Shown here: positions 1 to 18,757 of the stretch, piece after piece
How positions within the stretch are numbered: position 1 is the stretch's first letter
Layout: each line of letters opens with the position of its first letter
NCBI GenBank assembly: GCA_943704425.1
Contig: CALSCP010002017.1
Span: 80,285 to 129,294, forward strand
Direction: 5' to 3'
Source of the DNA: Ministeria vibrans ATCC 50519
Lineage: Eukaryota; Protista; Filasterea
DNA: 49,010 nucleotides
Made by a program: the position numbers and the translations under genes
The notes under the pieces: model-generated
The model's database searches: none
Told to the model about the DNA's origin: nothing
Seen by the model: only the letters and a program-made list of their open reading frames with translations

Positions 1-78
1 ATTGTGCACTTTTCTGTTTTTTTTTTTTTTTCGTTGTTGAATTGCATCTCCGTGACTGATTTTACCCGTGTTGTTCAG

Positions 79-661
79 GTCACTTGGCAAGAAACGGTAC
101 TTGATTCGACCGGCGCCGCGCATTGTAGTGAGGCACGAGGCAGAGGACACGTGTGGGGGTATGTATGTGCGTGCCGAGCTGGTGCAGGGGGACGACGAGC
201 AGGTGTGCGAGCGGGCCCTGGACGGGGATGTCATTGAAGTGCCCCTTAGCAGCGCACTCTCCACCGAAGTGACCTTTTCGCGTCTCTGTTGCATGATCAT
301 GCCCAAAAAACTCCAACAAAACGGCAAACTACGTCTGAAATTCACACTGCACTGCAACTGTCACAACACAGCAGCACGACAGTCACCAATTCCGCACGCA
401 TGGTGTCTCTCGTCGCCCTTTCGGCTCTTCTCCAACTACGGCCAGATGACGGCGCACCAGCGCACCGAGTTCATGCAATCTAGCTCGCGCCCCCGCTCAG
501 CCCTTGCGTCGCCTCTCGCGCTACCCCCGGCGCCGCTTCCACTCCCCCCGTCCCCTTCCACGCCTTCGTCGACCCTCCTGTCTCCCGCTCACTCTACTCG
601 GAAGCGTCGTCGTGTCAATCTTTCTCAGTCCTTCGACCTTTATCATTCTGATGACGATTGA
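79..661 (+). CDS. 3' exon of a putative p53/STAT-like Ig-fold DNA-binding protein (5' part outside window)
   Basis: Acceptor ttgttcag at 78, then an open frame to TGA 661. ...KLRLKFTL...CLSSPFRLFSNYGQM resembles the end of STAT-type DNA-binding domains (SxPxxxxSNxxQ). It is followed by a Pro/Ser-rich region and a basic NLS-like RKRRR. Family call is inference. Confidence 0.45.
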
Positions 662-776
662 GTTCTTTCCTTCTCTTTCTTTGCGTGTGTTGTTTGTGTG
701 TGTGTGTGTGTTTTTGATTCTTCTTCGTATTTTCTGTTTTCGTTTTATGCAATCTTTGTACAATAAACAATTTTGA

Positions 777-2447
777 TCACTTTCGTTTTCTGACTTTTGA
801 ATTTGGTTTTCCTTTCTTCCCTTTCTTTCCTTTCTTCTTCTTCTTCTTCTTTTTGGGAAGTCCTAAACAAAAACAGATTCAGCGGTGACATTTGTCTTTG
901 CGACGTTCTCTCTGATTGATTTAGTGTGAGTATCCTTGTGTGAGTGTGAGGGAGTAATTTGCGTCACTCCATCTGATTGATTTAGTGTGAGTATCCTTGT
1001 GTGAGTGTGTATGTCACTCTCTGATTCATTTGTGTGCGCGTGTGGTGTGTGTCACTCTGAGTGATCTTTCTCTCTCAATCTCAGTGAGTTGTGCTGCGTA
1101 CCTCTGCGAACCATTTCGCCCCTCCACCAACACTGGATGAGAAGTGCTGCGCTGTACTGTCGCAATGCCTCTTTGGCCTTGGCCTCGGCCTCTTCCTTTA
1201 CCCGCCGCTCATCAAGCACGACGCTCTCCATTGCGCAGTACTGCTTCGTCAACTCGTCACACCGGCTCAGGTCCCGAGTGCGCCCTACGACAGTAAGATG
1301 GTTGTATTAGAGTCAGGGTTAGAATTAACGTCAGGATTAAGGTCACACTGACAGAGTTGCATTTTTCATTAGGATTGAGACTATTTCGTTGCAACTGTGA
1401 CATCTACTTACCATTTTTGAGAGCCTCGAGCTCGCGTGACTTGGCCTCAAAGTCCGTCTCAAACTTGTCTGCCCATTGCTCGACCTCCCGTTCCAATTGC
1501 GCCGTCCGCATCGTCAAAAAGCGCTCCATCTCCAATTGCACGCGTCCTTCCACGCGTTCCCTCTGCTCCCACTCTGCTCTTTGCTCCTCCAACACCCTCT
1601 CCTGCTCCTGCACCGCCCATTCAAACCCTTCCAGCGCACTCGCCCGCAGCGCACACTCCCGTCTCGCTCCTGCCTCACTCGCCACTCGGCTACTTCTCAC
1701 CCGCCCTCGTTGCTCCGCCACCCTCTGTTCCAATTCTTTCAATCGCTCTTTCCCTTCCGTTTCCACCCGTGAAATCTCACATTTCAATCTACACCCAATA
1801 AAAAGATTGATCCTCAATTATTTTTAAATGTTTTTGCTACTCACCGTTCAATTTCAAGTGCCGTATCACATTCGCTCGCAAGCGTCGTTGAAAGCAAGTC
1901 TTGGGTTCTACGCTCGCATTCCACATAGTCGACGAGCGTCTCAAACTGTTGGGAGCGTGTCAGCTCGGTGCGTGTCCGCTCAAACGTGTCCATCAGACTG
2001 TGACATTCGCGTTGCACTTTGCGCGCGTACGCTTCCTTTGCATGCCCTACACCGCACATAGATAAACACCCCCTGCAGGTTGTGTTCTTCAGCTTACGTT
2101 CTCGTTCGTGTTCGCGTTGAAGTGTTTTTGAGCGAGTGGGTTTTCTCGACAACACGGGCTCTTCGTGCTCGCTGGCCGAAACGCCGTGGATAATGGACAG
2201 CTGAAGGAGTGCATCTTCCAGAACACTCGACATCATAACGCTCTATTGGGCAATGCGCACGAAGTCGTGTGAGTACCGACAGAAAGGGGTCCTTTTCATA
2301 CCGTTGCTGCGCTCAGTTCATATTGGTTTTGAGACCTACGTGAAAAGAGAAAAGCAGTGTAGCCATTGAGCGATCATCAGAGCAACCCGTAAAGACACAC
2401 CGACTGCCAGGGCCCAAGAGCAAGGGTAGCGCCTCGCGTGGCTCCAT
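777..2447 (-). CDS. IQCG: IQ motif-containing G / dynein regulatory complex subunit 9 (multi-exon)
   Basis: Coiled-coil exons (ORFs 1841-2236, 1404-1817, 1052-1252) and the IQ motif AALLIQCWWRGEMVRRG. Splicing at donor 1101 / acceptor 863 adds a Lys-rich tail LPKKKKKKKKGKKGKKGK ending at TGA 777. Start 2447 (MEPREAL...) is inferred from splice sites. Confidence 0.8.
911..1060. repeat. Intronic tandem repeat, ~61 bp period, about 2.5 copies
   Basis: tctgattgatttagtgtgagtatccttgtgtgagtgtg at 911 and 972, with a degenerate third copy near 1020. Lies in the last IQCG intron. Confidence 0.85.
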
Positions 2448-2776
2448 TCAGAAAGATACTGGTTGTCTTGGCAACGGAAAAAAAAGAACAACTGAATGTT
2501 TTCACAGCCAATGCCCAAAGAAATGGAAGAGACAGAAGAGTTGGTCAGTTGTTATACAAGAAGGGTTCTAAATGAAGAGAAAAGAAAATAATAAGTACTA
2601 TTAATTATTTTAATTCATATTATTAAACACTTTGCTCGACACTGAACATTTGACACACTCACAGACAGACTCACTCACTCACCTTACACTTGTATGACAC
2701 AGTCTGAATAATAGTAAAAACAATACTAATAATAATTATAATTATTATTTTTATTGATTCAAGCGGACATACTGAA

Positions 2777-4254
2777 TTAGAGAGCGTTGTGCTCAATCAC
2801 AATGGAATTGGGGCCATTGGTGGCAATGGTCCCACCACAATCAGTTGCGGGAGTCATCTTCCACAAGGGACTGAGCTCCTTGCCATTGGCGCCGTACGAG
2901 TGCATGTCGGAAAAGGTCATTTTGCCGCGCGCAAGGTCATCGCACTCTTTAATGTTGTACACTTCCAGTGTCGTATCAAGCCACTACACCAAAAATTTCA
3001 TGTCATGCATCACAGCACAGAAAGAAAAGCGTACGTTGAACCAGCGCTGCTCTGCGTCACATCTACACATTAATAGAGAGCTGTCAGAAGGACACACCAC
3101 ACACTCTATCTCTCTTTCCTCTCTCTGTATCTGTACTGGAGGGTCGTGCTGATGGTCGCATTGGCTGCGTCGGTGAATGCACTTACAACAAGGTACTCCT
3201 CATTGCCCGGCTTGTCGCTCGTCTCCTCAATCGAACCGTACAAAGTATCTCCCTACTCCACACACACACACATACATACACGTATCATTCTTGCCCTCAC
3301 ACTCTTGCTATGATACCGCTTTGAATCCTTGAAAGGGCTGCGAGCTCACTGTGAAGTTCTTAGGGCAGCAGTACCAACTGGCCATGCTCCAGCCAGTGAG
3401 GCCATTGCCCCATCTACCTATTATTTTAGCAGTGTGTCTGTGAGGTGTGCTTTGGCGTACGTCAGCACCGGCTGCAGAATGGACAGTGTCTTGTTCTTTC
3501 CGCCGTTGTTATTTTGTGAGCCGATGAAATAGAAGAGCACAGGCTGCAAAAATAACAACCAAGATAACAACCAGGTCAGCACAAAGTCACGCAACCTGCG
3601 GCCCCTACATCCGCCGACTGCGACTTGGGGTCCTCCGGCACGGTGTACAGCGACGTGAACTTGGTCATGGGCAGCTCGTCCGTCGTCAGGTAGTACCCCG
3701 CGTTGTCAAGCCAGCCTAAACCAAACAGGTCAGCTTGCTGCTTCTCCACGCGCGACACACACTGAAACAGCTGGTTATGCGGCAAGCAAAAGAAAGGAGT
3801 CTAAACCAAAGTCGCAAAAACAAACAAGACGGCATTGTGGCCGTCGCCGGGCATGCGCACCGACACCGCCGGCATGAATGTAGGGAAAAGGCACTGGGAA
3901 ACACGCACGGGCGTCGCCGGGCATGGGCACGGGCGCCGCAAGCACGTAGAGAGGGGAAAGGGAGCGCACTCAGGGTTGAACTTTCGTACCGTCCGGAATG
4001 GACGCTCCAACAGAAGCGGAACGCGCCGATTTGTCGGGCATTTGGCAGTTAGGGTTGCTGCGAATAGACCGGAGGAGGGCACCCTCGGCGGTGTGCACGT
4101 CGATTCCGGTTTCAGTCTCGATAACTTTCGAGCCGTGCGGGACAGTCACAACACACTCGTCAAGGGTCTCTCCAAAGGGAGTCAGCCTTGTCTTTGAGGC
4201 ATCGCCGAGTGCAATCAATGCGCAGAGTGCGACGAGGAGAGATTTCGTATGCAT
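2777..4254 (-). CDS. Secreted protein, probable glutamic-peptidase (G1/neprosin-like) fold, multi-exon
   Basis: Signal peptide MHTKSLLVALCALIALGDA and a propeptide-like LTPFG..ECVVTVPHG. The spliced mature part reads PDG|WLDNAGYY, YTVPEDP, LFYFIG, SILQPVLTY, WSMASWYCCP, TLEVYNI..C and ends IEHNAL*. The Gln in ILQPVL and the Glu in TLEVY fit a Q/E dyad (inference). Confidence 0.6.
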
Positions 4255-5938: not shown

Positions 5939-6017
<79 letters not shown>

Positions 6018-6261
6018 TGTGTGTTGCTCAATTTTAGTCTCGTTTGTGCATCGCACTGTGAAACCGAGTGCGATTGTGACACATCTGCACTCGAAGCGCA
6101 TTGCAGTACGGAATGGGCACATGTACGCACATCGACTGACTGTGGCACTGGGACTTGATGTCGAGCAAGGAGTTGTCCGTGTCTCACTCGCCCACTACAA
6201 CACACCAGCGGAAGTCCGCTACATTGTCGACGCACTCAAAGAACTGTTTGTGACAACATGA
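4377..6261 (+). CDS. Aminotransferase class V / cysteine-desulfurase-like PLP enzyme (VC1184-type subfamily), multi-exon
   Basis: MSHDECRRYFPHL..WIFAENAGG|SQVP, HEANAGP, FPHVSNLLG, VDGVAFAPHR, PLP-lysine motif FSTYK|VFGPHMG, IAVRNGHMYA, GVVRVSLAHYNTPAEV; stop at 6261. Confidence 0.85.
5941..6023. repeat. (GT)n microsatellite in an intron
   Basis: Seen directly; it is the source of spurious CVCV/HTHT ORFs. Confidence 0.95.
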
Positions 6262-6825
6262 ATGAAAAAATGTGGATTTTGAATAGGAAAAAAATGTCAA
6301 TTTGATCTTCTACAATGTTACTTTGCGAACAAGCAAATTAAAAATTCAATAATAGTCGCTTTGAACATGTGCATTTATTGTGTGGCTTTTGGGTGTGTCT
6401 GACAGTAAGACAAAGCAACAGTTTAACGGGAGATGAGAGATAAACTCCACTGTTCGATTGTGCTAATAACTCCGTCTTGTCATTTGTTGTGTACTTGAAC
6501 ATTCAACGGGAACACCGAAATTCCGACATACATTGCATGGGGTCACTGGGATTTAACCTGCTTAAAATGTGCCAAAGAAGATTTACACAATAATATTCAA
6601 CTGGGCGGAATCTTCGCGGAATTATTTTAGTTATTCATGATACAGTCACCAGTCACCAGTCACTCACTTACACACTACGCAAAAGCACAGCCAAGCGAGT
6701 AAAGCAAGCTAAGCTAGTGAGGCCACCATGGTAAACTCAGCCAAAACTCGCTCTAGTAGGTAGTTCGAATAGGAATAAACGAAGTGAAAATTACTCGGAT
6801 ACCAAATTTATTTGATTTTTCAACA

Positions 6826-8454
6826 ATGGCCTCTGCTACTTCCGCTGACGACGACGACCCTCTTGCCCTGTTCGCGTCCATGTCGGCCCAAGCCGGAAGT
6901 GGCTCGACCCCAGCCTCCTCCAACGAAGCCCCTGCGGCTGTCGCTGCCGTGGAGCAGCTGGCGGGGCCGTCGCAGTCGTCGCCGTCGTCGAGCGACTTTA
7001 TTGAACAGTCGCCACTCGTCTCTCTCGTCGTCTCGATCACCACCGACATCAGCAACCCACTGCCCTGCATCATCTGCGACGCCTCGTTTGCCGGCACCGA
7101 CCAGCAGCCCTACTTGCTGCATCTGCTCGAGCACCACAGGATTGTCATTGCCAAAGTTGAGCGCGTTGCTCAACTCGACGCCTACGTGCGCCACTGGCGC
7201 CAGCGCCTTCGCCAGTGCGTGCCCGAGCAGCATCATGCCGACCCCCAGCGCCTGCTTGACGCCCTTCCCCTGTTCGCGTCCGTCATCCGCGCGACAACGA
7301 CGACGCCAAGTGCGTCCGTCACCGACGATTTCTACTTCCTTCTTGGCAACGTTCTCGACGAAGACAAGGCGTTGCGTGCGTCGCTCGGCCGCGCTCGAGT
7401 CAAAGCGGTGCTTGCGCAACAAGAGCGCGAGCGGCAATCCACTGCGTTTGCAAGTGAATGCCTCTTTTGCCGGCAACAGTGTCACGGCAACCGTCGCGAC
7501 CTTCTCGACCACATGCACACCGAGCATGGCTTCTCCATGGGCCACCCGGACAACCTTGTCTTTGTCGAGGACTTTGTTGCGCTGCTCCGTCGAAACATGC
7601 GCGACCATCGCTGTCTGTTTTGCGAGCGACTCTTCAAGAGCCGCGACGTCCTCAAGAGTCACATGCGAAAGAAGCGGCACGTTCGCCTCAGCTCAAACTC
7701 CATATACGATCGGCACTTTCTCATCAACTATTTGGATCCGGGTGTGCGCTGGGAAGAACTGCGTCGCGAACCGGACGAACTGCTCATCAGAGTGCGCAGA
7801 GAAAAGAGCGAGGATGAACTGTCGGCGGAAGAAGACGAAGAGGAAGAGGAAGACGAAGAAGTAGAAGAAGAAGAAGAGGAGGACGAAGAAGAAAAAGGAG
7901 CAGTGGAGGAGGTGAAGGGAGAAGGAAAGTTTGGGGAAGCACGGGAGGATGCATTGCGGTGTAGTGGCCGTGGGAGAGCGAGTGAGGCGGAGGAGGCTAC
8001 GCGTTGTCTGTTCTGTTCGCACACGAGTGTGTCTCCCAGCTCCACTTTCACTCACATGCAGAGTGCGCATTGCTTTGATTTCTGGTCGGTCTCGCGCACT
8101 CTTCGTATTGGATTTTACGGGCGAGTCAAACTGGTCAATTATATTCGTCACGAGACGCTCTCACTGCGCTGTCTGCACTGCGCACACGACACACCATTCG
8201 CATCCGCCAACGCACTCAGCGCACACTACACTCAGTTTCCATTGCACTGCACTCTTGACAGTGCCAGCGATTGTTCCTTTCTCACCCAACCACAGTACTT
8301 CTTTCCCACTCTCGACAATGATCCTCTCTTGTGCTGTCTTGCCCACACACACATCGGACCACAACAGACAGGAGAGGAACAAGAAGACGATTTTAGCGAT
8401 GAAGAGTGCGCCATTCCAGAGCCCCTGCCGCACATTGACCCAATTGTATTGTAA
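6826..8454 (+). CDS. ZNF277: Zinc finger protein 277 (C2H2, Rei1-like), single exon
   Basis: CIIC..HLLEHHRIVI, DEDKALR, QERERQ..F..CLFC, HMHTEHGFSMGHPDNLVFV, CLFCERLFK..LKSHMRKKRH, YDRHFLINYL, FYGRVKLVNYIR, QYFFPTLDNDPLL. First ATG in frame is 6826. Confidence 0.9.
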   Translation: MASATSADDDDPLALFASMSAQAGSGSTPASSNEAPAAVAAVEQLAGPSQSSPSSSDFIEQSPLVSLVVSITTDISNPLPCIICDASFAGTDQQPYLLHLLEHHRIVIAKVERVAQLDAYVRHWRQRLRQCVPEQHHADPQRLLDALPLFASVIRATTTTPSASVTDDFYFLLGNVLDEDKALRASLGRARVKAVLAQQERERQSTAFASECLFCRQQCHGNRRDLLDHMHTEHGFSMGHPDNLVFVEDFVALLRRNMRDHRCLFCERLFKSRDVLKSHMRKKRHVRLSSNSIYDRHFLINYLDPGVRWEELRREPDELLIRVRREKSEDELSAEEDEEEEEDEEVEEEEEEDEEEKGAVEEVKGEGKFGEAREDALRCSGRGRASEAEEATRCLFCSHTSVSPSSTFTHMQSAHCFDFWSVSRTLRIGFYGRVKLVNYIRHETLSLRCLHCAHDTPFASANALSAHYTQFPLHCTLDSASDCSFLTQPQYFFPTLDNDPLLCCLAHTHIGPQQTGEEQEDDFSDEECAIPEPLPHIDPIVL

Positions 8455-8499
8455 ATTAATAATGATTGTATAATAATACCATTATTATTGAGATTTCTT

Positions 8500-9392
<893 letters not shown>

Positions 9393-9395
9393 CTA

Positions 9396-9931
<536 letters not shown>

Positions 9932-9944
9932 TCATTTTTTTTAT

Positions 9945-12137
9945 ATGTCTTCTTGCACCCTCATCGCCGCGCTTCTGTTTGTGGTTTTTGCAGTTGCGCG
10001 GCCAGAGGTTGTGGAGCGGCTTTCGGATGCAAGGCGGAAGTCTCTTCGCGACGCATCGTTGTGTGGCACCAACACGTCGACGCCGCTGGGCATTGACCAG
10101 GTACACGCGTGTAGCCTGCTCCCCCCCCCTCCCTCACCTTCTCTCCATTTCACTCGCCGCTTTCGTCCTTTCACTCTATTTTGACTCGTTCCGAGACAAA
10201 AATATATATCGGCGTCTTTTTTTGAAATGGAAATAATTATCACTCTGTCCCACAGGAGTTCGCTGTCAATCTCCTGAATTCGTCCATGGCAAGCATCACT
10301 GTGCCACCCGGTGCCTTATTCAACGGCCAGCTGTTCCCCTTCGTTGTCGCACGGCCCGTCCTGGTCGATTTTAGCGGCGCCGTTCTGCGCTGCTGTTCGT
10401 CACTTCTCTCCGCGCTCGTTATCGACTCTGACGGCGTCTCCTTGGCCAACTTCACCATTACGGGCTGTCGAGGACAGTCGGCTGTGCATCTCAGGCCACA
10501 GGCGTCGCTCGTTCTCAGCGACGCGACCTTTTTTGAGAACGGTCCCGACGCGACATTGCTTGCATCTCTCGCGCTCCACACAGCCGCAGTCTCGCTGCCG
10601 TTCCTCGTGGAAACATCTCCAGTCTACGTGCCGGGGATCCAGGTGGACTCGCAAGCGGCGCTGGTGGGAACTCGGCTGCGTTTCGATACGCTTGCGGGGT
10701 TGCCGTCTGGAGCGATTCTTGCTGCTGGTAACACCTCGGTCAGCTTGCTCCATTCGACCTTTGACTCGTGTCAAGGGACCCACGCCGGCGCTTTTGCGGT
10801 GCTCAGAAGTCGTTTTAACATGACGGAGTGCATCGTGCGCGGAACCAGCTCGCTTCAGGGCGCCGGAGTGGCTCGGATTGACGACGGCTCATCTGTCACT
10901 GTTGCTCGCTCTCTCTTTGACGGCTGCTCGGGGTACGCCTCGGGTGCACTGCTTGCTAGTGGTGCGACCTTTGTTGATATCACCAACTCACAGTTTGTGA
11001 ACTGTCGTGCTGGCGGCACGACCGCCACCACGGAAGGTTTTGGGGGTGCCATGACGCTTGCCGACTTTGCTTCTGCCACTGTCTTGCGCTGCTCCTTCAC
11101 GCACTGCCACTCAAACGGCGGCGGTGGTGCACTCAGCTTTGCCTCTGTTACACCTTCTATTGTACAGCACTGTGTGTTTGCCGAGAACACGGCGCTCGTC
11201 GAAGGTGGCGATGTGTACGTGTCACACTCGACTCAACTTTCCCTCCTCGACTGCACCTTCGACTCGTCCGCTGCTCCCGTTGGCGCGTCCCTCTCGGCCC
11301 ATGGCGACGCCACAGTTTCCTATTTGCGATGCAATGCGACACAACACGCTGCGAACATTGGAGGGTTTCTTGCGGCCTCTCAATCCGCCACCGTTCTCAT
11401 GAGCTTCGTCACCGTTTCACGCGTCGCTGCTCATCTCGGTGGTTTTGCTGCCCTCCTTCTCTCCAGTGCCTTTCGGGCCACCCACCTTACCGTCGTTGAT
11501 TCGACAGCTGCAAGTCGCGGTGGCGCGTTTCATCTTGATCATGCCGCCACAATGGAGTGCGACGCGTGTCTTTTTCGCAACGTCACGGCCGATTTTGGTG
11601 GCGCGCTCCACTGCACGTCGGGCGCAACGGTGAGCGCCAGTCACTCGCAATTCCTTGACAACATTGCCACGAGGAGCGGTGGCGCTGTGTACACCATGCA
11701 ACAGTGCACTGTTACCTTTTTAAATTGCACCCTCACCGGCAACGAAGCGCTCCTGAGCACCGGCGGTGCGCTGGCCGCGTTGCACGAGACCACTCTCACA
11801 CTGGCAGAGTCCCACCTGGCGGGGAACACCGCGCCCAGTGGCGGTGCTCTTTCCGTCTGCGGGCCCGTGCAGGTAACCATTGTAGGCTGTACCTTTACCA
11901 AGAACCGCGCCATCAAACAGAACGGTGGAGCACTGCTGGCGTCAGTCGATGACGCAGTCGCACGTGGCATTGCCCAAGAACGGTCTCTCGATGCGCTCGT
12001 GGCATCTCTCGTTGAACTCGAAGCCGAGCACACTCGGTGGTCCGTCACTCCCGAAGTGACACTGCTCACGTCGCTCAATAGCACTAACTGGGCGAGCATC
12101 TTTCCCAGTTCTAGTGCCACCTCCAATACTGCAACAA

Positions 12138-12181
<44 letters not shown>

Positions 12182-14184
12182 TTATCTCTCTTTCCCTCAC
12201 TTCACGTCCAGCAGAGCGCCTTTGTGAGCAACACGGCAGCCACGAGTGGCGGTGCCATTTACTCATTGCACTCCATACAGCGAATCGCGAGCGTGCTCTT
12301 TCATGCTAACTCGGCCGGTGTCTCTGGCGGTGCATTTGCCGCGGTGTACTCGGCCATTGGCGAACCGTACGGCGAACTCGCGGAAATTGCCAGCTGCAAC
12401 TTCACCGAAAACACGGCGGGCGAACGTGGCGGTGGCGTTGAAATGGACGTGCAGGTAGAGTCGAGTTCGCCCGCTCAGTTGCACTTTGCAGGCAACCATG
12501 GTGCACTCAACTCGGCCGCCATCGGCGGCTTCGCGTACATTCTGGCATCACCCACATTGCAAAACCGTGATATTATCTACACCGATATTCTCGCCATCTT
12601 TCCCGTGTTTTTGGCCTTCAACTCGGTTGGTGTCAACCAAGCGACACTCTACGGCAACGACTTTGCTACCGACGCGATGCGTCTCGTCTTTTTCTGGGAC
12701 TATCCCGACTGTCCCGTGTGCCCCGGCAACGTTAGCATGTGCTGTACTCCTGTGCAATCCATTGTGAGCGGTCGTGAAATGTCCATTGTGCCCACCATTG
12801 CTGTGCTCGACGGATTCGATCATCTTGTGCCCACTGCATTGCTTCAAGTGACCATTAGCGCCAGCACGAATAGCAGTCTCGACTCTCAAGCTTACATCCG
12901 CAATCTTCCAAGCACACCACTCTTTGTGACCAATGGAACAGCGCCTGTGCCCGGTGCGCTCACTCTCTACGGACAGCCCGGCGTCGTGACCATTGTGGTT
13001 TCGGCTCAAGACGGCTCGCTGCTGCCCACGTCCTTTTCGCTGACCATTGATGAGTGTGCGACGCTCTATGCCGAAAATGCTGTGCTCTTCTTCGACGGAA
13101 ATGCCCCTGTGGCGCTTTGTGCCAACTCAAACACCATTCCCTCGCAGGTGGTCGTTGTCTTTTTTATTCTCACCGCTCTCTTGCTTCTCGGCGTGTTCAC
13201 AGCTCTCGTCATCTTTGTGCGTCATCGTCACAAGAAGATTGTCGACATGACCGGCTTGCTCTATCTCTGCTTGCACATTGCGGCGCTTCTCATTGGTTCG
13301 GTGCTCGTGTACCAGCGTGATCCTGCCGCCAGCGTTATTCGCTGTCGTGCCTTTTTGCTCATTCTCTCTTGGTGCTATCTTCTTATCACCGTTCCCATCA
13401 TTGTGAAATTTGTCTGGCTCAAAATTCAATCACGTGAGCAGCTACGCAACGTGTCCATGACCATTCCGACGCTGACACTGCTGGTGCCCACGGCGCTTGC
13501 ACTCGCCTTTGCCTTCTTCTACCTCATGGGCTTTAGTCTTGAGGGCTCCGTGCACGTTGCACTGAGTCTGTCTGACGACCGCATTGCCCAAAAGCGCTGT
13601 GTGTTCACGGGCGCCGGTGGCATTGTTTTTGCAGGACTCCTCTTTGGCTTCTTTGTCGTACTGGTGCTGCTTGCGTGGCACACTCGCGCGACGACAACAC
13701 TCTACAACGAAGGCAACCGCATGACATGGGCTATTGGCTGCATGGCCTTTGTTCTGCTTGTCTGCATTGTCATGCTCGTTGCCATGTACCGCAACCAAGA
13801 CGGCCTCTACACTTCCGTCGCCGTTGGCTATCTCCTTTTTGCTCTCATTCTGTTCCGCTTTGAGTTTTATCCTGTCGCCAAACTCACTCGTGGCGCCTGG
13901 GAAAGTCTCGACAAAGAGGCGTTTCTCTCCTATGCCCAAGGAGACCGAAAGGCACGAACACAAGACATAGCGAGATGAAAATAATTATTATTATTGTATA
14001 TTAATAATAATTCATACCATCATTCTGATTCTTGTGTGTAGGCGATGAAGGAACTAGCGGCGGCACTGACTCGCGCCGGCGTGGGCGTGTACGTTGACGA
14101 GATCCGTGCAGAGGCAGGCGCCATTTGGAGAACGGAAGTGGCGCAGGCAATCAAAGCTTCAAAGGTATTTTTTTTAGCTTGTTT

Positions 14185-14232
<48 letters not shown>

Positions 14233-16968
14233 GGAGAGAGAGAGAGCGATTATGCATTTATTTGTTTCTTGCGTTTAGATTTTGATCTTTATGGTTTCTT
14301 CTGAGTCTGCAACGAGTGCATACTGCCTTGAAGAAGTTCAGTTTGCCTATGACCTGAAGTTGCGCATCTTTCCGGTAATTGTTGAAGGAGGGTTTCAGGA
14401 GTCAATGAATTCAGGGTTGGAGAGTAAGTGTTGGCTCTTGCGCGCGTTCGTTTATACTGCAATATTTTACTTTTCTATTTTGGTTGTAGTGCTGATGCGA
14501 CGATACCAATGGACGTATTTTGACAAGGGAGACTTTGATGCGAGCTTTACGCAGTTGATGGAAGGGGTCAGAGGAACTCTGCAGCGGATAGATGTTGATG
14601 GCGTAAGGAAGACTAAAAAAGAATGAGGAGATAACTGAAAGAGGAGCGTGTCATTGTGTGCCAATATAAGGGGGTGGTTTTTTATTTTGACTGTTTTGTT
14701 ACTTAGGGAGCGCCCGCGGCTCGATCCAACTCCACTACCATTCAATTGGTCAGCCCTGAAGATATGAATGAGGCTGATTATCGATTGGCGGACGAACTCA
14801 AACCGAAATCAGTAAGGGAGTGAGGAGTGAAGAATAAGAGAATGGGGAGAATGAGATTGTATACACTGCTTTGCATGATTGCAGCAGAATTCTTTTTTAT
14901 CGGAATAAAATAGTAATAGTTATTAATATGATTTTTTTGTAGGTGTTTTTGTCGTGGTCCCATCGTGACGGGGGGTTTGTCAAGGAGCGACTTTGGCCCG
15001 ACCTGTGTTTGCGTGGATTGGATGTGTGGATTGATTTCTTGTCGTTGCGCAGCGGTGATGACTGGCGGTGTACCATTGGCGATGCAATTCGTGGCTGTGA
15101 CGTGCTTGTGTTTGTGGCGACGCACACTGCTGTAAGTTCACAGTACTGTCAAGAGGAAGTGCTCTATGCGGAACGGTATGGCAAGCGTATTGTGACGGCG
15201 CTTGTGGATGATTGTCGTGATCGAGTGCAACACCACTCGAGCACGGTGGATGTGCGGTCGCTGCTGTTGAATTCACCTGCAGTGGATTTCCGTGAGCAAG
15301 CGACCTATCGCAGTCGTTTAGACGACCTTGCGCGTGTCTGTGCCACCTTTATCAGCGAGGCACAGTTGCGCGAGACGCTTGAAGATCAGGGTGTAGTGAT
15401 GAATTCGTTGCAACTTGTGCCACCAAAGCAGAGCAGTACGAGTAGCGGTGGTGGTAGTATTGCGTCGACGGCTTCTTTGGGACGACGTCTCTCGTTGAAT
15501 CATCATCATTTGGTCGAAACTGACTGCGATATGGTGAAGGTGACCGAGGCGAGTGGCGAGTGCTTGTTAGCGCGAGACAATTTGGCGACGGAGAACGGCG
15601 ACGTGCGGGATGTGGTGGTGCGCAAGACTTCTGGTGGACGCACGAATGCGAATGCGAATGCGAATACGAATGCAAATGCGAATGCGAATGCGAATGTGAA
15701 TGCAGGTGTCAATGAGATGTCACTGCCTTTGGGTCACTCACAAGTGAGCACCGTGTCGGCGTCAACGGTGGTGAGTGGCGGTCGTTTCCGCATTGAGCTG
15801 CTGCAGACTCTCTTTGATGGTGGTAGCAGCAGTGGTTCTCGTGCTGTGACTCCCCTCGATTCCAGCATGGCTCATTCACCGGCGCTCTCGGGAGCCACTT
15901 CCTTTGCGTCGGCTTCGTCGCCCCTCTCGCGTCGCAAGGGGGCACCTCGCTACGCGGCCCTGAAACGCGCCAGCACTGTCAACGAGACGCCCAAGCCTGC
16001 CCCACTCAACATTCTTTCAGAGGAAAGCCATGGTCAAAGTGACACATCGTCTCAGACCACTCCATTGACGATTGCATCAACATCGCGTCGTCGGTTTTCG
16101 ATGCGTCAGTCGACGCTCCAGAACGACCCACGTTTAAAGTTGGACTCTACGCGACGCGACCGAGGACGTGCTGTGTTGCCTTTCAACCGCACTGTTCAGA
16201 TGGGTGCCACTGTGCCGCGCTCCGTGTCCATGCGCGATTATGGCAGGAACGATGGCGAAATAGCAATGGAGTCCATGACGCCCATGGTGATCACGGCCGA
16301 TGTGTCGACGAGCGAGTCGGTTGGTGATCACGGCCGATGTGTCGACGAGCGAGTCGGCTGAGTTTGAGCAAGCGCAGCCAGAAGTGGTGGAGACGGCGGT
16401 GAGGCAGAACAAGAGCAAGTTGCGCAAAGGTGTTTCGTTTGCGACGACATCCTACGAGCGAGCAGCAGATGATGAAGAAGGAGGCGCAAGTGAGGCTGTG
16501 GTGGAACTTGAGTCTAAGAAGGAGGAAGATGTGTCGGAGATGGCGGTTGTGGTGGAATTGGACGGTTCACCGCTTGTGGCGCGTCGGCGGGTTCCCGCGA
16601 AACCCAAGACGACGACGACAACGACGACAGAGACAAAAAATGCCACTGAGAAGGCAGCGGAAGAGGAAGTGCCCCAAGCGGTGGTGGAACGAGAGCCGCT
16701 GCCGCGTGTACTTGTCCATGCGCATACGACTGAGTCAATTACGAGTACAGGTGGCGATGATGAGATTGTGCGCGTTGCTGTGACCTCTGCAGCGCCACCT
16801 CGAGCGCGTTCGCTGCAACGTGGAGGGCTTGTGCGGCAGCAACGACTGTCTGTGCTTGACGACGGGGCAGATCTCAAGTCGGGCGCGACAGTGGAGGAGG
16901 AGGAAGAAGAGAGTGATACGGAGAAGGCACCGGGGGACGATGAGGAGGCCATTGAGTCGTGTGTGTAG
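9945..16968 (+). CDS. Beta-helix ectodomain / class C GPCR 7TM / tandem TIR receptor. Exons 9945-10100, 10256-13951, 14042-14164, 14279-14423, 14490-14602, 14707-14811, 14943-16968; the last exon is frameshifted by a 37-nt duplication
   Basis: Signal peptide MSSCTLIAALLFVVFAVA. Many GGA(L/V/I/F) and FxxN repeats. Seven hydrophobic helices with class C signatures: RHRHKKIV in ICL1, C..K in TM3, ECL2 Cys, LAWHTR..YNEG. TIR1 reads FLSYAQGD..GVYVD..W..EVAQAIKASK..FMVS..SAYCLEEV. TIR2 reads VFLSWSHRD..VWID..GDDW..I.DAI..SQYCQEEV. All splice phases were checked and are in frame. Confidence 0.8.
16285..16357. repeat. Perfect 36-nt tandem duplication (period 37) inside a coding exon
   Basis: tggtgatcacggccgatgtgtcgacgagcgagtcgg at 16285-16320 and 16322-16357. 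Confidence 0.95.
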
Positions 16969-17099
16969 TATATTGTACAATAAATTATTATTATTATAAT
17001 TATTTTTATTATTAATTATTGTTAATTTAATACCAATAATAATTAATCTTCCTATTCAAATCAAGATCAGTTTTTTTCTTCACTTCTCCCACCTTCACA

Positions 17100-17223
17100 A
17101 TGACACGCGACAACCCCGACAAGTCCGTAACAGGCTACTGCTTTGCACGAAACCTCGTGTGGTTCACCAACTGCATTACTTTTGTACGGCACAGCGACAA
17201 TTCAATGTCCGTCTGTGTGTTGA

Positions 17224-17254
<31 letters not shown>

Positions 17255-17403
17255 CTGTAGTTCACCGGTGCCGCCTTAATAGCTGCCGGCATCTTCTCAC
17301 TTGTGGAGCTTGACAAGTATTTGCCCCTCACGACGACGAACATCGCGGTATGGGCGTGTGCTTCCCACACGAGACGGATGTGGATGAAAGCGGACGCTGA
17401 CGT

Positions 17404-17448
<45 letters not shown>

Positions 17449-18757
17449 TCTCTCTCTCTCCTGTGGCTGCTTCCTCCGCTTTCTCCCGTCTTCTTCCATC
17501 CTGCCCGTAGTACCTTGGTGCCTTTCTGATTGTCACTGGAACTATTCTTTTTCTGAGTAAGTTCTTTTTTTTCTTCTGGCTGTTTTTTTTTGAAAGTTCC
17601 GTTTTTGGTTCAGTGGGATTTCTCGGCTGCTGCGGCTCGATGAAGGAGGATGTATGCATGCTTCAGTGGGTAAGTGACTGGCTGAAATGGTGGAGTTAAC
17701 GCGAAGCGAAAAGAGAAGAGAGAAAAGGCCTAAAAAAAAAAAGACGCGCAGAGTGGACATTTCAAAAATAGAGTGATATGTTGTGAGTTGTTTGCTTTGC
17801 TTACTGGAGTGCCCCTGGCCCTTCTGCCCTGTGTAGTTCTTCAACATTATATTCATCCTGGTCATTGTGGAAATCGCGGCGGCTGCTCTGGGCTACGTGT
17901 ACAGAGACACGGTAGGAAGCACAGTGGGCATTTGCGACACACACACGCACACACACACACACACACAAATATAGTATTTTATTATTATTGTCTCTTATAT
18001 CTTGTCTTCTTGTTATTGTGCTTGTGATGGTGTGGCGGGTAGATCTCAAACACGCTGGTGTCCCAGTGGAATGCCGGAGTGACCAGCAACAGCACAACTG
18101 TCCTCAACACCATTGATCTCGTCCAAACAACGGTAACAAAATCAATTTTGTGTGTTGGTTTTTATTGATTCTTTTTATTTTTGTAGTTTTCGTGTTGTGG
18201 TTTGAACAACTATACCTATTGGAATTCAGTGACAACCTATAACTATGACCAACCTCCAAGGTATTTTAATTATAATTATATTAATAAGTATTTTCTTACA
18301 ATCATACCAATTTTGTTGTGATGATTGTATTAAAATAATTATTATTAATTATATTTTTTGTAGTTGTTGTCAGAGGTCGTTTTACCAGGCAGAAGGGTAT
18401 CCCGACTGCATTGACCCGCCGTCAAATTTGTACCAGGAGGGATGTACCACGGCCTTTGGGTCGTGGATCAGTCGGAATCTAATCATTGTCGCATCAGTCG
18501 CCACCGTATTCATTCTCATGCAGGTGCGCCATTTAGAGATATCTTGTGTGTGTGTGTGTGTGTGTGTGTGTCTATGGACTCGTTACGAATGACAGCCCTA
18601 ACTCTAATGACAAGTGGAACCCTAATCCTAATCCTAATCCTATTAGATTCTTGGAATGTGGTTTGCGTGCTGTATGATCAAAAACATTCGTGAACGCCAA
18701 TACAACGAATACACGCGCAACAAGAAGGGGATGGAAATGAAGCAACGCGGCGTCTAA
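17100..18757 (+). CDS. Tetraspanin (multi-exon)
   Basis: Four TM segments; GFLGCCGSMKE after TM2; polar E in VEIAAAALGYVY; large loop with CCG (FSCCGLNN), CC and YQEGC; TM4 ...MQ|ILGMWFACC; stop at 18757. Confidence 0.9.

What the first reader, a model, noticed from the sequence alone, without database searches (positions are those of the whole stretch)
9945..16968. Class C GPCR fused to two tandem TIR domains, with a Pmp-like beta-helix ectodomain: candidate novel protist immune/sensing receptor
Seen in sequence: in-frame splicing joins a signal peptide, a ~950-aa ectodomain rich in GGA(I/L/V)/FxxN repeats, a 7TM bundle with class C signatures (LAWHTR..YNE, TM3 C..K) and two TIR domains. TIR1 starts about 15 aa after TM7. 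Established: class C GPCRs usually carry a Venus-flytrap domain; GGAI/FxxN beta-helices are typical of chlamydial Pmp and pectin-lyase-like adhesins; TIRs signal as scaffolds (TLRs) or NADases (SARM1, plant TNLs, bacterial Thoeris). GPCR-enzyme fusions are known from oomycetes and other protists, but I do not recall a GPCR-TIR-TIR architecture. Inference: a glycan- or microbe-binding receptor coupled directly to TIR signalling, i.e. a TLR-like logic built on a GPCR scaffold. The ORF track breaks it into five unrelated ORFs, so automated annotation would probably miss the fusion.
Basis: partly seen in the sequence, partly recalled or inferred. Interest (0 to 1): 0.93.

Follow-up and report, generated by a model that had tools for sequence, protein, structure and literature searches.

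The report
GPCR with two TIR domains
A transcribed gene of a marine single-celled eukaryote encodes one receptor with a long beta-helix outside the cell, a class C GPCR-type seven-helix core and two TIR immune-signalling domains inside; the design is real, shared with Capsaspora, and absent from the papers I searched.

Summary
Pfam finds Beta_helix, Chlam_PMP, 7tm_3 (above its cut-off) and two TIR_2 domains on the + strand. Spliced RNA contigs of run X1 place the 7TM core, TIR1 and TIR2 on one transcript through five introns. A second contig joins the signal-peptide exon to the ectodomain exon.

The genome holds five paralogues of this design. In four of them 7tm_3 and TIR1 share one uninterrupted open frame, so the fusion needs no splicing model.

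A profile search of 1.84 billion proteins found the contiguous 7TM+TIR arrangement only in two Capsaspora owczarzaki genes (CAOG_08484, CAOG_08660) and two metagenome fragments. TIR1 and TIR2 each group across species, so the tandem is ancestral. Structure models match class C GPCRs and SARM1, SPARTA, TLR and plant TIRs.

Two corrections. Intron 2 is GC-AG. The last "join" is not a splice but a 37-nt tandem duplication that shifts the frame.

No paper I searched describes a GPCR-TIR fusion. This scan already followed up a paralogue on other DNA of this genome. The function (TIR as direct output, probably NAD+ cleavage) is inferred.

The parts
9945..10100 (+). Exon 1: start codon and a signal-peptide-like hydrophobic N-terminus (52 codons)
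   Evidence: Translation. The splice to exon 2 is seen in an X1 RNA contig. The ATG itself is not covered by RNA, because the contig starts at 9989.
10101..10255 (+). Intron 1 (155 nt, GT-AG)
   Evidence: Joint 10097>10253 with cut +3; ends checked.
10256..13147 (+). Ectodomain part of exon 2 (about 960 aa): right-handed beta-helix with ten GGA[ILVFM] turns, 12 N-glycosylation sequons and 25 Cys. A poly-Ala insert lies at 12124-12186.
   Evidence: Pfam Beta_helix 5.8e-18 and Chlam_PMP 9.2e-12; motif census; Atlas look-alikes are beta-helix/adhesin-like clusters, a lead only.
13148..13888 (+). Seven-transmembrane core, class C (7tm_3) type
   Evidence: PF00003 at 40.9 bits against cut-off 33.5; 7 hydrophobic segments; AF2 model with 7 helices and an ECL2 hairpin; top Foldseek hits are all class C GPCRs.
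13922..13951 (+). First strand of TIR1 (FLSY...), the last 10 codons of exon 2, 11 residues after TM7
   Evidence: Alignment A1 with paralogues whose TIR1 is contiguous.
13952..14041 (+). Intron 2 (90 nt, GC-AG). If retained, an in-frame stop at 13976-13978 would give a receptor without TIRs.
   Evidence: Joint 13949>14040 with 4 ambiguous letters; cut +2 gives GC..AG; sequence.
14042..14602 (+). TIR1, exons 3-5 (14042-14164, 14279-14423, 14490-14602), with introns 14165-14278 and 14424-14489
   Evidence: TIR_2 partial hits; joints in X1 and X5; alignment to paralogue and Capsaspora TIR1.
14707..14811 (+). Exon 6: 35-codon linker between TIR1 and TIR2 (introns 14603-14706 and 14812-14942)
   Evidence: Joints in X1, the second also in X5.
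14943..15350 (+). TIR2 (start of exon 7)
   Evidence: TIR_2 2.7e-15; AF2 model pLDDT 90; Foldseek hits SARM1, SPARTA, TLR15 and plant TIRs.
15351..16361 (+). Low-complexity Ser/Thr/Asn-rich cytoplasmic tail, with a stop at 16359-16361
   Evidence: ORF 14943-16361. RNA was laid only to 15939; the contig carries 376 more letters.
16285..16358 (+). 37-nt tandem duplication (two copies, 36 of 37 identical) that shifts the reading frame
   Evidence: the repeat finder family D2. The RNA contig (X1) and the DNA contig (X11) each carry 376 letters beyond 15939. If colinear both end near 16315, inside copy 1, as expected at a repeated 31-mer (inference).
16362..16968 (+). Open acidic frame that would continue the protein by about 200 aa if only one copy of the 37-mer were present. 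AATAAA follows at 16979-16984.
   Evidence: ORF 16300-16968; sequence.

Best explanation
Shown: this is one real, expressed, seven-exon gene of about 1918 codons. It encodes a type-I-oriented receptor with these parts in order:
- a signal peptide;
- a right-handed beta-helix (Pmp-like) ectodomain of about 1000 aa;
- a class C (7tm_3) seven-helix core;
- after an 11-residue linker, TIR1;
- a linker of about 50 residues;
- TIR2;
- a disordered tail.
It is one of five paralogues in this roughly 30-Mb genome. The family also occurs in Capsaspora owczarzaki, so the design predates the split of the two lineages.

Inferred mechanism: the variable beta-helix ectodomain binds an extracellular polymer, most plausibly a glycan or a microbial or prey surface. 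Binding rearranges a class C-type 7TM dimer. Because TIR1 hangs directly under TM7, this changes how the TIR domains of neighbouring protomers pack. TIR self-association is the output step. The most likely output is formation of the composite NAD+-cleaving site, around the invariant glutamate of the YCxEE motif, giving ADPR-type nucleotide signals or local NAD+ loss. G-protein coupling may exist in parallel.
For: Domains are and the single spliced transcript. Four paralogues carry 7tm_3 and TIR1 in one uninterrupted frame.

The Capsaspora proteins P0003/P0151 and P0005/P0152 have Beta_helix + 7tm_3 + 2 TIR, and 7tm_3 + 2 TIR. TIR1 and TIR2 are separated by a 95/97 branch, and each side holds both species.

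The 7TM model matches only class C structures at the top of the list (mGlu, GABAB, GPR156; TMq 0.61-0.74). The TM3 and ECL2 cysteines, the TM3 lysine and the ICL3 W..R..TT...E motif are conserved across the family.

The TIR2 model (pLDDT 90) is closest to the SARM1, SPARTA and plant NADase TIRs and to TLR15. The glutamate at the catalytic position is invariant in every TIR1 and TIR2 compared, Capsaspora included.

The cytoplasmic TIRs are the best-conserved parts (TIR2 45-57% identical between paralogues). The ectodomains are 23-27% and the 7TM cores 22-31% identical. This is the pattern of varied inputs on a fixed output.

No Death domain and no Rel-homology domain were found in the genome, and the three other TIR loci are not MyD88-like. 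This weakens a TLR-type adaptor cascade.
Against: No activity, ligand, oligomeric state or partner was tested. The same glutamate is also present in TLR1, TLR2 and TLR6 TIRs, which are not known NADases. By sequence profile the best solved relatives are TLR15, TLR2, TLR6 and TLR1, so a scaffold role is not excluded.

The TIR2 homodimer prediction gave no verdict. The 7TM model has only moderate confidence (pLDDT 66).

The genome has at least three G-alpha genes, so ordinary G-protein coupling remains possible. The absence of Death and RHD domains rests on an exon-by-exon search of a fragmented assembly.
Confidence: 0.55

Rival explanations
1. Scaffold-type TIR signalling. The TIR domains are not enzymes. 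On ligand-induced clustering they recruit other TIR proteins or kinases, as TLR and IL-1R TIRs recruit adaptors.
For: The family profile's best solved sequence relatives are TLR15, TLR2, TLR6 and TLR1 TIRs at E 3e-10 to 3e-9. The genome has three further TIR loci that could be partners: one next to a TPR-bearing frame, one with a ZZ finger and one with an unknown N-terminus. The catalytic-position Glu is also kept in non-enzymatic TLR TIRs.
Against: No Death domain, no MyD88-like protein and no Rel-homology domain were detected. Structural neighbours are dominated by NADase TIRs. The glutamate is invariant over 15 TIR copies in two lineages.
Confidence: 0.27
2. A conventional G-protein-coupled, or adhesion-like, class C receptor. 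Heterotrimeric G proteins are the main output, and the TIRs only modulate trafficking, desensitisation or clustering.
For: The genome has at least three G-alpha genes. The class C ionic-lock positions (TM3 Lys, ICL3/TM6 Glu) and the short ICL3 are conserved. Beta-helix ectodomains are typical of adhesins.
Against: TIR1 starts 11 residues after TM7, directly below the G-protein-binding face. The TIRs are the most conserved parts of the family and have been retained in tandem since before the Capsaspora split. That is hard to explain for an accessory role.
Confidence: 0.15
3. An artefact: a chimeric assembly or a read-through of two neighbouring genes, a GPCR and a TIR protein.
For: The window copy has an intron exactly between the 7TM and the bulk of TIR1, with an in-frame stop inside it. 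The assembly is fragmented and has a gap at 9570-9930.
Against: A spliced RNA contig crosses all junctions. The first TIR1 strand is already encoded in the 7TM exon. Four paralogues and two Capsaspora genes have the fusion in one open frame.
Confidence: 0.01

Closest known systems
Capsaspora owczarzaki CAOG_08484 (XP_011270066.1, KJE89761.1) and CAOG_08660 (XP_011270271.1, KJE92002.1)
   Same: Same order of parts: beta-helix ectodomain (Pfam-detected in CAOG_08484), 7tm_3, TIR1 directly after TM7, then TIR2. TIR1 groups with TIR1 and TIR2 with TIR2.
   Different: Only about 18-19% identical to the window copy in the whole-protein alignment A2. They are annotated only as hypothetical or TIR domain-containing proteins. 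No function is known and no paper was found that names them.
Class C GPCRs (mGlu, GABAB, CaSR, GPR156, GPR158/179)
   Same: 7tm_3 profile match above the cut-off, a seven-helix fold closest to mGlu, GABAB and GPR156, TM3-ECL2 cysteines, a TM3 lysine and an ICL3 NE-type motif.
   Different: No Venus-flytrap (ANF_receptor) or NCD3G cysteine-rich domain; a beta-helix takes their place. The cytoplasmic side carries two TIR domains instead of an unstructured tail.
Toll-like receptors (LRR-TM-TIR)
   Same: A surface receptor with a repeat-solenoid ectodomain and a cytoplasmic TIR close to the membrane. The family's TIRs are nearest in sequence to TLR15, TLR2, TLR6 and TLR1 TIRs.
   Different: Seven helices instead of one, a beta-helix instead of LRRs, and two TIRs instead of one. 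No MyD88, Death or RHD components were found in the genome.
Enzymatic TIR proteins (SARM1, plant TNL TIRs, bacterial AbTIR, SPARTA and Cat1)
   Same: The TIR2 model is structurally closest to SARM1 and SPARTA TIRs. The glutamate at the catalytic position is invariant.
   Different: Those are soluble proteins activated by oligomerisation on ARM/SAM, NB-ARC, Argonaute or CARF modules. Here the oligomerising module would be a membrane 7TM dimer. Activity is untested.
GPCR-bigrams (GPCR-PIPK, -INPP, -AC, -PDE, -TKL; oomycetes, amoebozoans and others)
   Same: An N-terminal 7TM receptor fused to a C-terminal signalling or catalytic module, suggesting output without a G protein (PMC6033456, PMC5784254).
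   Different: TIR is not among the described accessory domains, and neither paper mentions TIR. None of the described types is reported with a large beta-helix ectodomain.
Chlamydial Pmp and pectate-lyase-like beta-helix adhesins
   Same: GGA[ILV] and FxxN turns; Chlam_PMP and Beta_helix profile hits.
   Different: Those are bacterial autotransporter passengers or secreted enzymes. Here the helix is the ectodomain of a eukaryotic 7TM receptor.

Membership tests
Class C GPCR (Glutamate family, Pfam 7tm_3) | 7TM domain matches PF00003 above the gathering score | tested here: met
   40.9 bits against 33.5 for the window copy; 42-64 bits in the paralogues; 82-105 bits in Capsaspora.
Class C GPCR (Glutamate family, Pfam 7tm_3) | Seven helices with a fold closest to solved class C transmembrane domains | tested here: met
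   Seven hydrophobic segments. In the AF2 model the listed Foldseek PDB hits (ranks 1-49) are all class C (mGlu2/4/5, GABAB, GPR156), E about 1e-6, TMq 0.61-0.74. The model's pLDDT is only 66.
Class C GPCR (Glutamate family, Pfam 7tm_3) | Conserved TM3-ECL2 cysteine pair and TM3 Lys / TM6-start Glu 'ionic lock' positions | tested here: met
   In alignments A1/A2, K117, C181 and R210 are invariant and C96 and E218 nearly invariant. Assigning these columns to the class C motifs rests on established knowledge, not on a residue-level structural alignment.
Class C GPCR (Glutamate family, Pfam 7tm_3) | Venus-flytrap (ANF_receptor) plus cysteine-rich (NCD3G) ectodomain | tested here: not met
   No ANF_receptor or NCD3G hit; Beta_helix and Chlam_PMP instead. 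This feature is typical but not universal: GPR156 and GPRC5 lack it and GPR158/179 use Cache.
Class C GPCR (Glutamate family, Pfam 7tm_3) | Obligate dimer that couples to heterotrimeric G proteins | not testable with these tools
   At least three G-alpha genes are in the genome. Coupling and dimerisation need experiments.
TIR-domain proteins | TIR fold (flavodoxin-like beta-alpha) and a TIR/TIR_2 profile match | tested here: met
   TIR2: TIR_2 2.7e-15, model pLDDT 90, top hits TIR domains. TIR1: split TIR_2 hits that align along the contiguous TIR1 of the paralogues.
Enzymatic (NADase) TIRs | Glutamate at the catalytic position | tested here: met
   The second E of YCxEE is invariant in all TIR1 and TIR2 copies compared and aligns with the conserved Glu of Cat1 and TLR TIRs. 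It is necessary but not sufficient.
Enzymatic (NADase) TIRs | NAD+ cleavage that depends on self-association | not testable with these tools
   The TIR2 homodimer prediction gave no verdict. An enzyme assay is required.
Toll-like receptors | LRR ectodomain, single TM helix, one TIR | tested here: not met
   No LRR hit, seven helices and two TIRs. It is not a TLR, though it may work in a TLR-like way.
GPCR-bigrams | [quoted passage not shown] | tested here: not met
   The layout fits the general definition, but TIR is not a described type and catalysis is unproven.

The most novel reading that the evidence does not exclude
These proteins are ligand-gated NAD+-cleaving receptors. A class C-type 7TM dimer would directly control assembly of a TIR active site and produce an ADPR-type second messenger without a G protein. 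That would be a filasterean surface-sensing pathway that stands in for Toll-like receptors, which the literature reports only in choanoflagellates and animals. It would also be the first GPCR whose direct output is a TIR enzyme.
Probability: 0.35. Interest if true: 0.9.

Novelty: new variant of a known kind. Interest (0 to 1): 0.75.

Why it matters
TIR domains are the shared currency of immune signalling in bacteria, plants and animals. Richter et al. 2018 (PMC6040629) found the LRR-TM-TIR layout only in choanoflagellates and animals.

A conserved family that hangs two TIRs directly under a class C GPCR core is a different solution to the same problem, connecting a surface sensor to TIR output. 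It has five copies here and two in Capsaspora, on a branch just outside that group.

It bears on three open questions:
- How TIR receptors arose before animals.
- Whether a GPCR can drive an attached module without G proteins, the unresolved question of GPCR-bigrams.
- How 7TM dimer rearrangement could gate TIR oligomerisation.

It is directly testable, because Capsaspora can be cultured and transfected (my own knowledge, not checked here) and the cytoplasmic TIR1-TIR2 fragment is small enough for enzyme assays.

Tried and rejected
1. The search for homologous proteins with exon 2 scored on the 7TM region found nothing. The word index is swamped by transmembrane words, so this is no evidence of absence. 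The exhaustive HMMER search replaced it.

2. phmmer of the window 7TM against PDB sequences gave no hit. The family is too divergent for single-sequence search; fold search settled the class.

3. Complex prediction of two TIR2 copies gave no verdict (score 0.00). It is neither support nor evidence against self-association.

4. Searches of the genome for RHD (PF00554), Death (PF00531) and the TRPM SLOG domain (PF18139, as a possible ADPR-gated channel downstream) found nothing. The assembly is fragmented and is searched exon by exon, so these are weak negatives.

5. The 7TM tree shows the five paralogues as one clade (97/97) and Capsaspora plus an environmental fragment as another. With only two TIR-less outgroup rows it cannot be rooted, so monophyly of all GPCR-TIR cores is not shown. 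The TIR tree carries the argument for a single origin.

6. The supplements of the 2025 eLife GPCR survey are not held. I cannot exclude that a table there lists TIR among the domains of filasterean Glutamate receptors. Its main text never mentions TIR.

7. The Atlas search of the ectodomain scored below 0.9 and is a lead only.

8. The chimeric-assembly idea was rejected.

9. A splice joining 14943-16361 to 16300-16968 was rejected. No intron-sized GT-AG fits, and the 37-nt duplication explains the frame change.

Steps left out by rule: the exons were never joined into one protein. Pfam, fold, PDB and homology searches were done exon by exon by reference. No whole-protein topology prediction, whole-protein fold or whole-protein database search was run. 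TIR1 of the window copy was analysed only as three separate exon pieces and left out of the tree.


Full report
WHAT IS THERE

The + strand between 9945 and 16968 carries several profile matches. One long frame (10286-13975) has Beta_helix (5.8e-18), Chlam_PMP (9.2e-12) and 7tm_3 (2.5e-10; 40.9 bits against a curated cut-off of 33.5). Downstream lie a TIR_2 match split over two short frames and a strong TIR_2 match (2.7e-15) starting at 14943. Reading the sequence at 13800-15400 gave candidate splice sites that keep the frame.

TRANSCRIPT EVIDENCE

Sixteen runs were listed, and I laid four of them on 9940-15939. Run X1, one of four runs of a single study that each hold about 0.84 of the sampled words, gives spliced contigs.
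- A 3659-nt contig joins 12187-13949 | 14040-14162 | 14277-14423 | 14490-14602 | 14707-14811 | 14943-15939 and continues for 376 more letters.
- A 2008-nt contig joins 9989-10097 | 10253-12123.
- The two contigs are separated only by a poly-Ala repeat (12124-12186) that the tool skips.

Run X5, from a different study under another organism label, independently shows the 14424-14489 and 14812-14942 introns. Run X11 is colinear with the genome and so is DNA. A poly-A metatranscriptome from seawater (X9) holds two identical pieces of the 7TM exon.

After the permitted shifts the exons are 9945-10100, 10256-13951, 14042-14164, 14279-14423, 14490-14602, 14707-14811 and 14943-16361. All are in frame and total 1918 codons. 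Five introns are GT-AG. Intron 13952-14041 is GC-AG.

A minor intron-retaining isoform that stops at 13976-13978 cannot be excluded from contigs.

ANATOMY

- Exon 1 begins with a hydrophobic signal-peptide-like stretch.
- The ectodomain (about 960 residues of exon 2) has ten GGA[ILVFM] turns, 12 N-glycosylation sequons and 25 cysteines.
- Seven hydrophobic segments follow, at exon-2 residues 965-1204.
- In the AF2 model of 13058-13951 (pLDDT 66, pTM 0.61) there are seven helices, a beta-hairpin in extracellular loop 2 and two short strands before TM1.
- The listed Foldseek matches in the PDB (ranks 1-49) are all class C receptors: mGlu4, mGlu2, mGlu5, GABAB and GPR156 (E about 1e-6, TMq 0.61-0.74).
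- The last helix ends 11 residues before the FLSY strand that opens TIR1, and that strand is still encoded in the 7TM exon.
- TIR1 (three exons) is followed by a 35-codon linker exon, TIR2 and a Ser/Thr/Asn-rich tail.
- The TIR2 model is confident (pLDDT 90). Its neighbours are the TIR domains of SARM1, SPARTA TIR-APAZ, chicken TLR15, RPP1, RPS4 and RUN1.

THE 3' END

There is no intron there. A 37-nt unit is present twice in tandem (16285-16321 and 16322-16358, 36 of 37 identical). This shifts the frame and brings a stop at 16359-16361. With one copy the acidic frame would continue to 16968, and AATAAA follows at 16979.

The X1 RNA contig and the X11 DNA contig each carry 376 letters beyond 15939. 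If colinear, both end near 16315, inside the first copy, which is what a repeated 31-mer does to a de Bruijn contig. I therefore take the duplication to be real in the reads, fixed or heterozygous.

A FAMILY, NOT A ONE-OFF

The assembly has 29.7 Mb in 2860 contigs. Searching it with the 7TM, with TIR2 and with the Pfam models gives five loci where 7tm_3 is followed by two TIRs: C2017 (this window), C1920, C1006, C2373 and C2106. In four of them 7tm_3 and TIR1 lie in one uninterrupted open frame of 586-1406 codons, so the fusion needs no splicing model at all.

Only two other 7tm_3 genes exist. One has an RCC1-like/EGF ectodomain. Only three other TIR loci exist: one next to a TPR-bearing frame, one with a ZZ finger and one with an unknown N-terminus.

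Conservation between paralogues differs by part:
- ectodomains: 23-27% identical;
- 7TM cores: 22-31%;
- TIR2: 45-57%.

RELATIVES ELSEWHERE

A profile of 7TM+TIR1 (alignment A1) was scored by HMMER against 1.84 billion representative proteins. Contiguous 7TM+TIR matches were only these:
- P0001, a 549-aa fragment from an ENA metagenome. Its 7TM segment is identical to the C2373 copy, so it comes from the same organism.
- P0003/P0151 and P0005/P0152, which are Capsaspora owczarzaki CAOG_08484 and CAOG_08660.
- P0017, a JGI metagenome fragment whose 3.2-kb contig encodes 7tm_3+TIR followed by two more TIR_2 genes or exons.

All other top hits are soluble multi-TIR proteins or TIR-less 7TM proteins. 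CAOG_08484 has Beta_helix + 7tm_3 + two TIRs.

A tree of the TIR domains separates all TIR1 from all TIR2 by a branch with 95/97 support, in 100% of bootstrap trees. This organism and Capsaspora occur on both sides. The tandem therefore predates their divergence. The window's TIR1 was left out of that tree because it is split over exons.

The tools hide the organism's name. A filasterean such as Ministeria is my guess and is not shown.

LITERATURE

- Exact-phrase searches for GPCR-TIR and its variants gave no paper.
- Searches for the Capsaspora locus tags and UniProt accessions gave none either.
- The 2025 eLife survey of GPCRs in close relatives of animals includes Capsaspora and Ministeria and discusses the diverse N-terminal domains of filasterean Glutamate receptors. 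Its main text never mentions TIR, and its supplements are not held.
- de Mendoza et al. 2014 mention species-specific Glutamate-receptor architectures only in a supplementary figure.
- Richter et al. 2018 treat TIR architectures (TLR, Kinase TLR, SARM1) without a 7TM form.
- The GPCR-bigram papers list PIPK, INPP, AC, PDE, TKL and AP, not TIR.

The proteins are public, but as far as I could search the architecture is undescribed. This scan had already noted the paralogues and followed one up with the same conclusion. I verified the Capsaspora link independently.

HOW IT PROBABLY WORKS

What is shown: one polypeptide with a solenoid ectodomain, a class C-type core and two TIRs attached 11 residues below TM7. 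The family keeps the following:
- the TM3 and ECL2 cysteines;
- a TM3 lysine;
- a W..R..TT...E motif at the ICL3/TM6 junction, which corresponds to the class C ionic-lock region (the motif assignment is from established knowledge);
- the glutamate at the TIR catalytic position, invariant in all 15 TIR copies compared.

What is inferred: class C receptors work as dimers whose 7TM interface rearranges on activation. TIR domains signal only when they self-associate, either forming a composite NAD+-cleaving site (SARM1, plant TNLs, bacterial systems) or a scaffold (TLR/MyD88). A TIR hung directly under TM7 is placed to read out that rearrangement.

The lack of detectable Death-domain, MyD88-like and Rel-homology genes and the NADase-rich structural neighbourhood tip me towards the enzyme reading. 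My odds are about 0.55 for enzyme, 0.27 for scaffold and 0.15 for a mainly G-protein-coupled receptor. At least three G-alpha genes are present.

The ligand is unknown. Beta-helix solenoids of this kind usually bind or cut polysaccharides or act as adhesins, so a glycan or a microbial or prey surface is the best guess.

VERDICT

The functional interpretation is plausible but untested. It is a new combination of known modules, a new variant of a known kind. It is not unique to this locus and is already present, unnamed, in public Capsaspora annotations.

Every search and fold used single exons or uninterrupted paralogue frames by reference.

Noticed in passing
window 13952-14041: The intron between the 7TM exon and the rest of TIR1 is GC-AG, the only non-GT donor of the six. 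It contains an in-frame stop at 13976-13978, so retention would give a TIR-less receptor. Only the spliced form appears in the contigs.
   Followed up: partly
window 16285-16358: A 37-nt tandem duplication shifts the frame of the cytoplasmic tail. The downstream acidic frame stays open to 16968. The RNA and DNA contigs each carry 376 letters beyond 15939, which if colinear puts both ends near 16315.
   Followed up: partly
window 9320-9930: Long (CA/GT)n microsatellite, then an assembly gap (a run of N, about 9570-9930) ending 15 nt before the proposed start codon. The promoter and 5' UTR of the gene are therefore missing from the window. The X11 DNA contig extends 113 nt into the gap.
   Followed up: no
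window 12124-12186: A poly-Ala/Thr low-complexity insert interrupts the beta-helix repeats. All contigs, RNA and DNA, break here.
   Followed up: no
window 17100-18757: A multi-exon gene 131 nt downstream on the same strand. One exon (18245-18589) gives a weak Tetraspanin hit (E 7.8e-4, 19.6 bits), below the 32.1-bit cut-off.
   Followed up: partly
window 8682-9203 (-): Exon of a short-chain dehydrogenase (adh_short 2.1e-12) on the opposite strand, upstream of the gap.
   Followed up: partly
L012 (G000:C1908:1-10000), 5947-9624 (-): Another class C receptor of this genome has an EGF + RCC1-like beta-propeller ectodomain and no TIR. Pigoraptor chileana P0128 has RCC1 + Calx-beta + 7tm_3.
   Followed up: partly
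L018 (JGI metagenome 3300071654 contig, 1-3169): An environmental contig encodes 7tm_3+TIR followed by two further TIR_2 frames. It may be a relative with three TIRs, or exons of a tandem-TIR tail, from an unidentified organism.
   Followed up: partly
window 10345-15861: Runs X1 and X11 share several single-base differences from the window, for example T>C at 10451, 11446, 12558 and 13120. The sequenced cultures therefore differ slightly from the assembled genome, through strain or allele differences or assembly errors.
   Followed up: no
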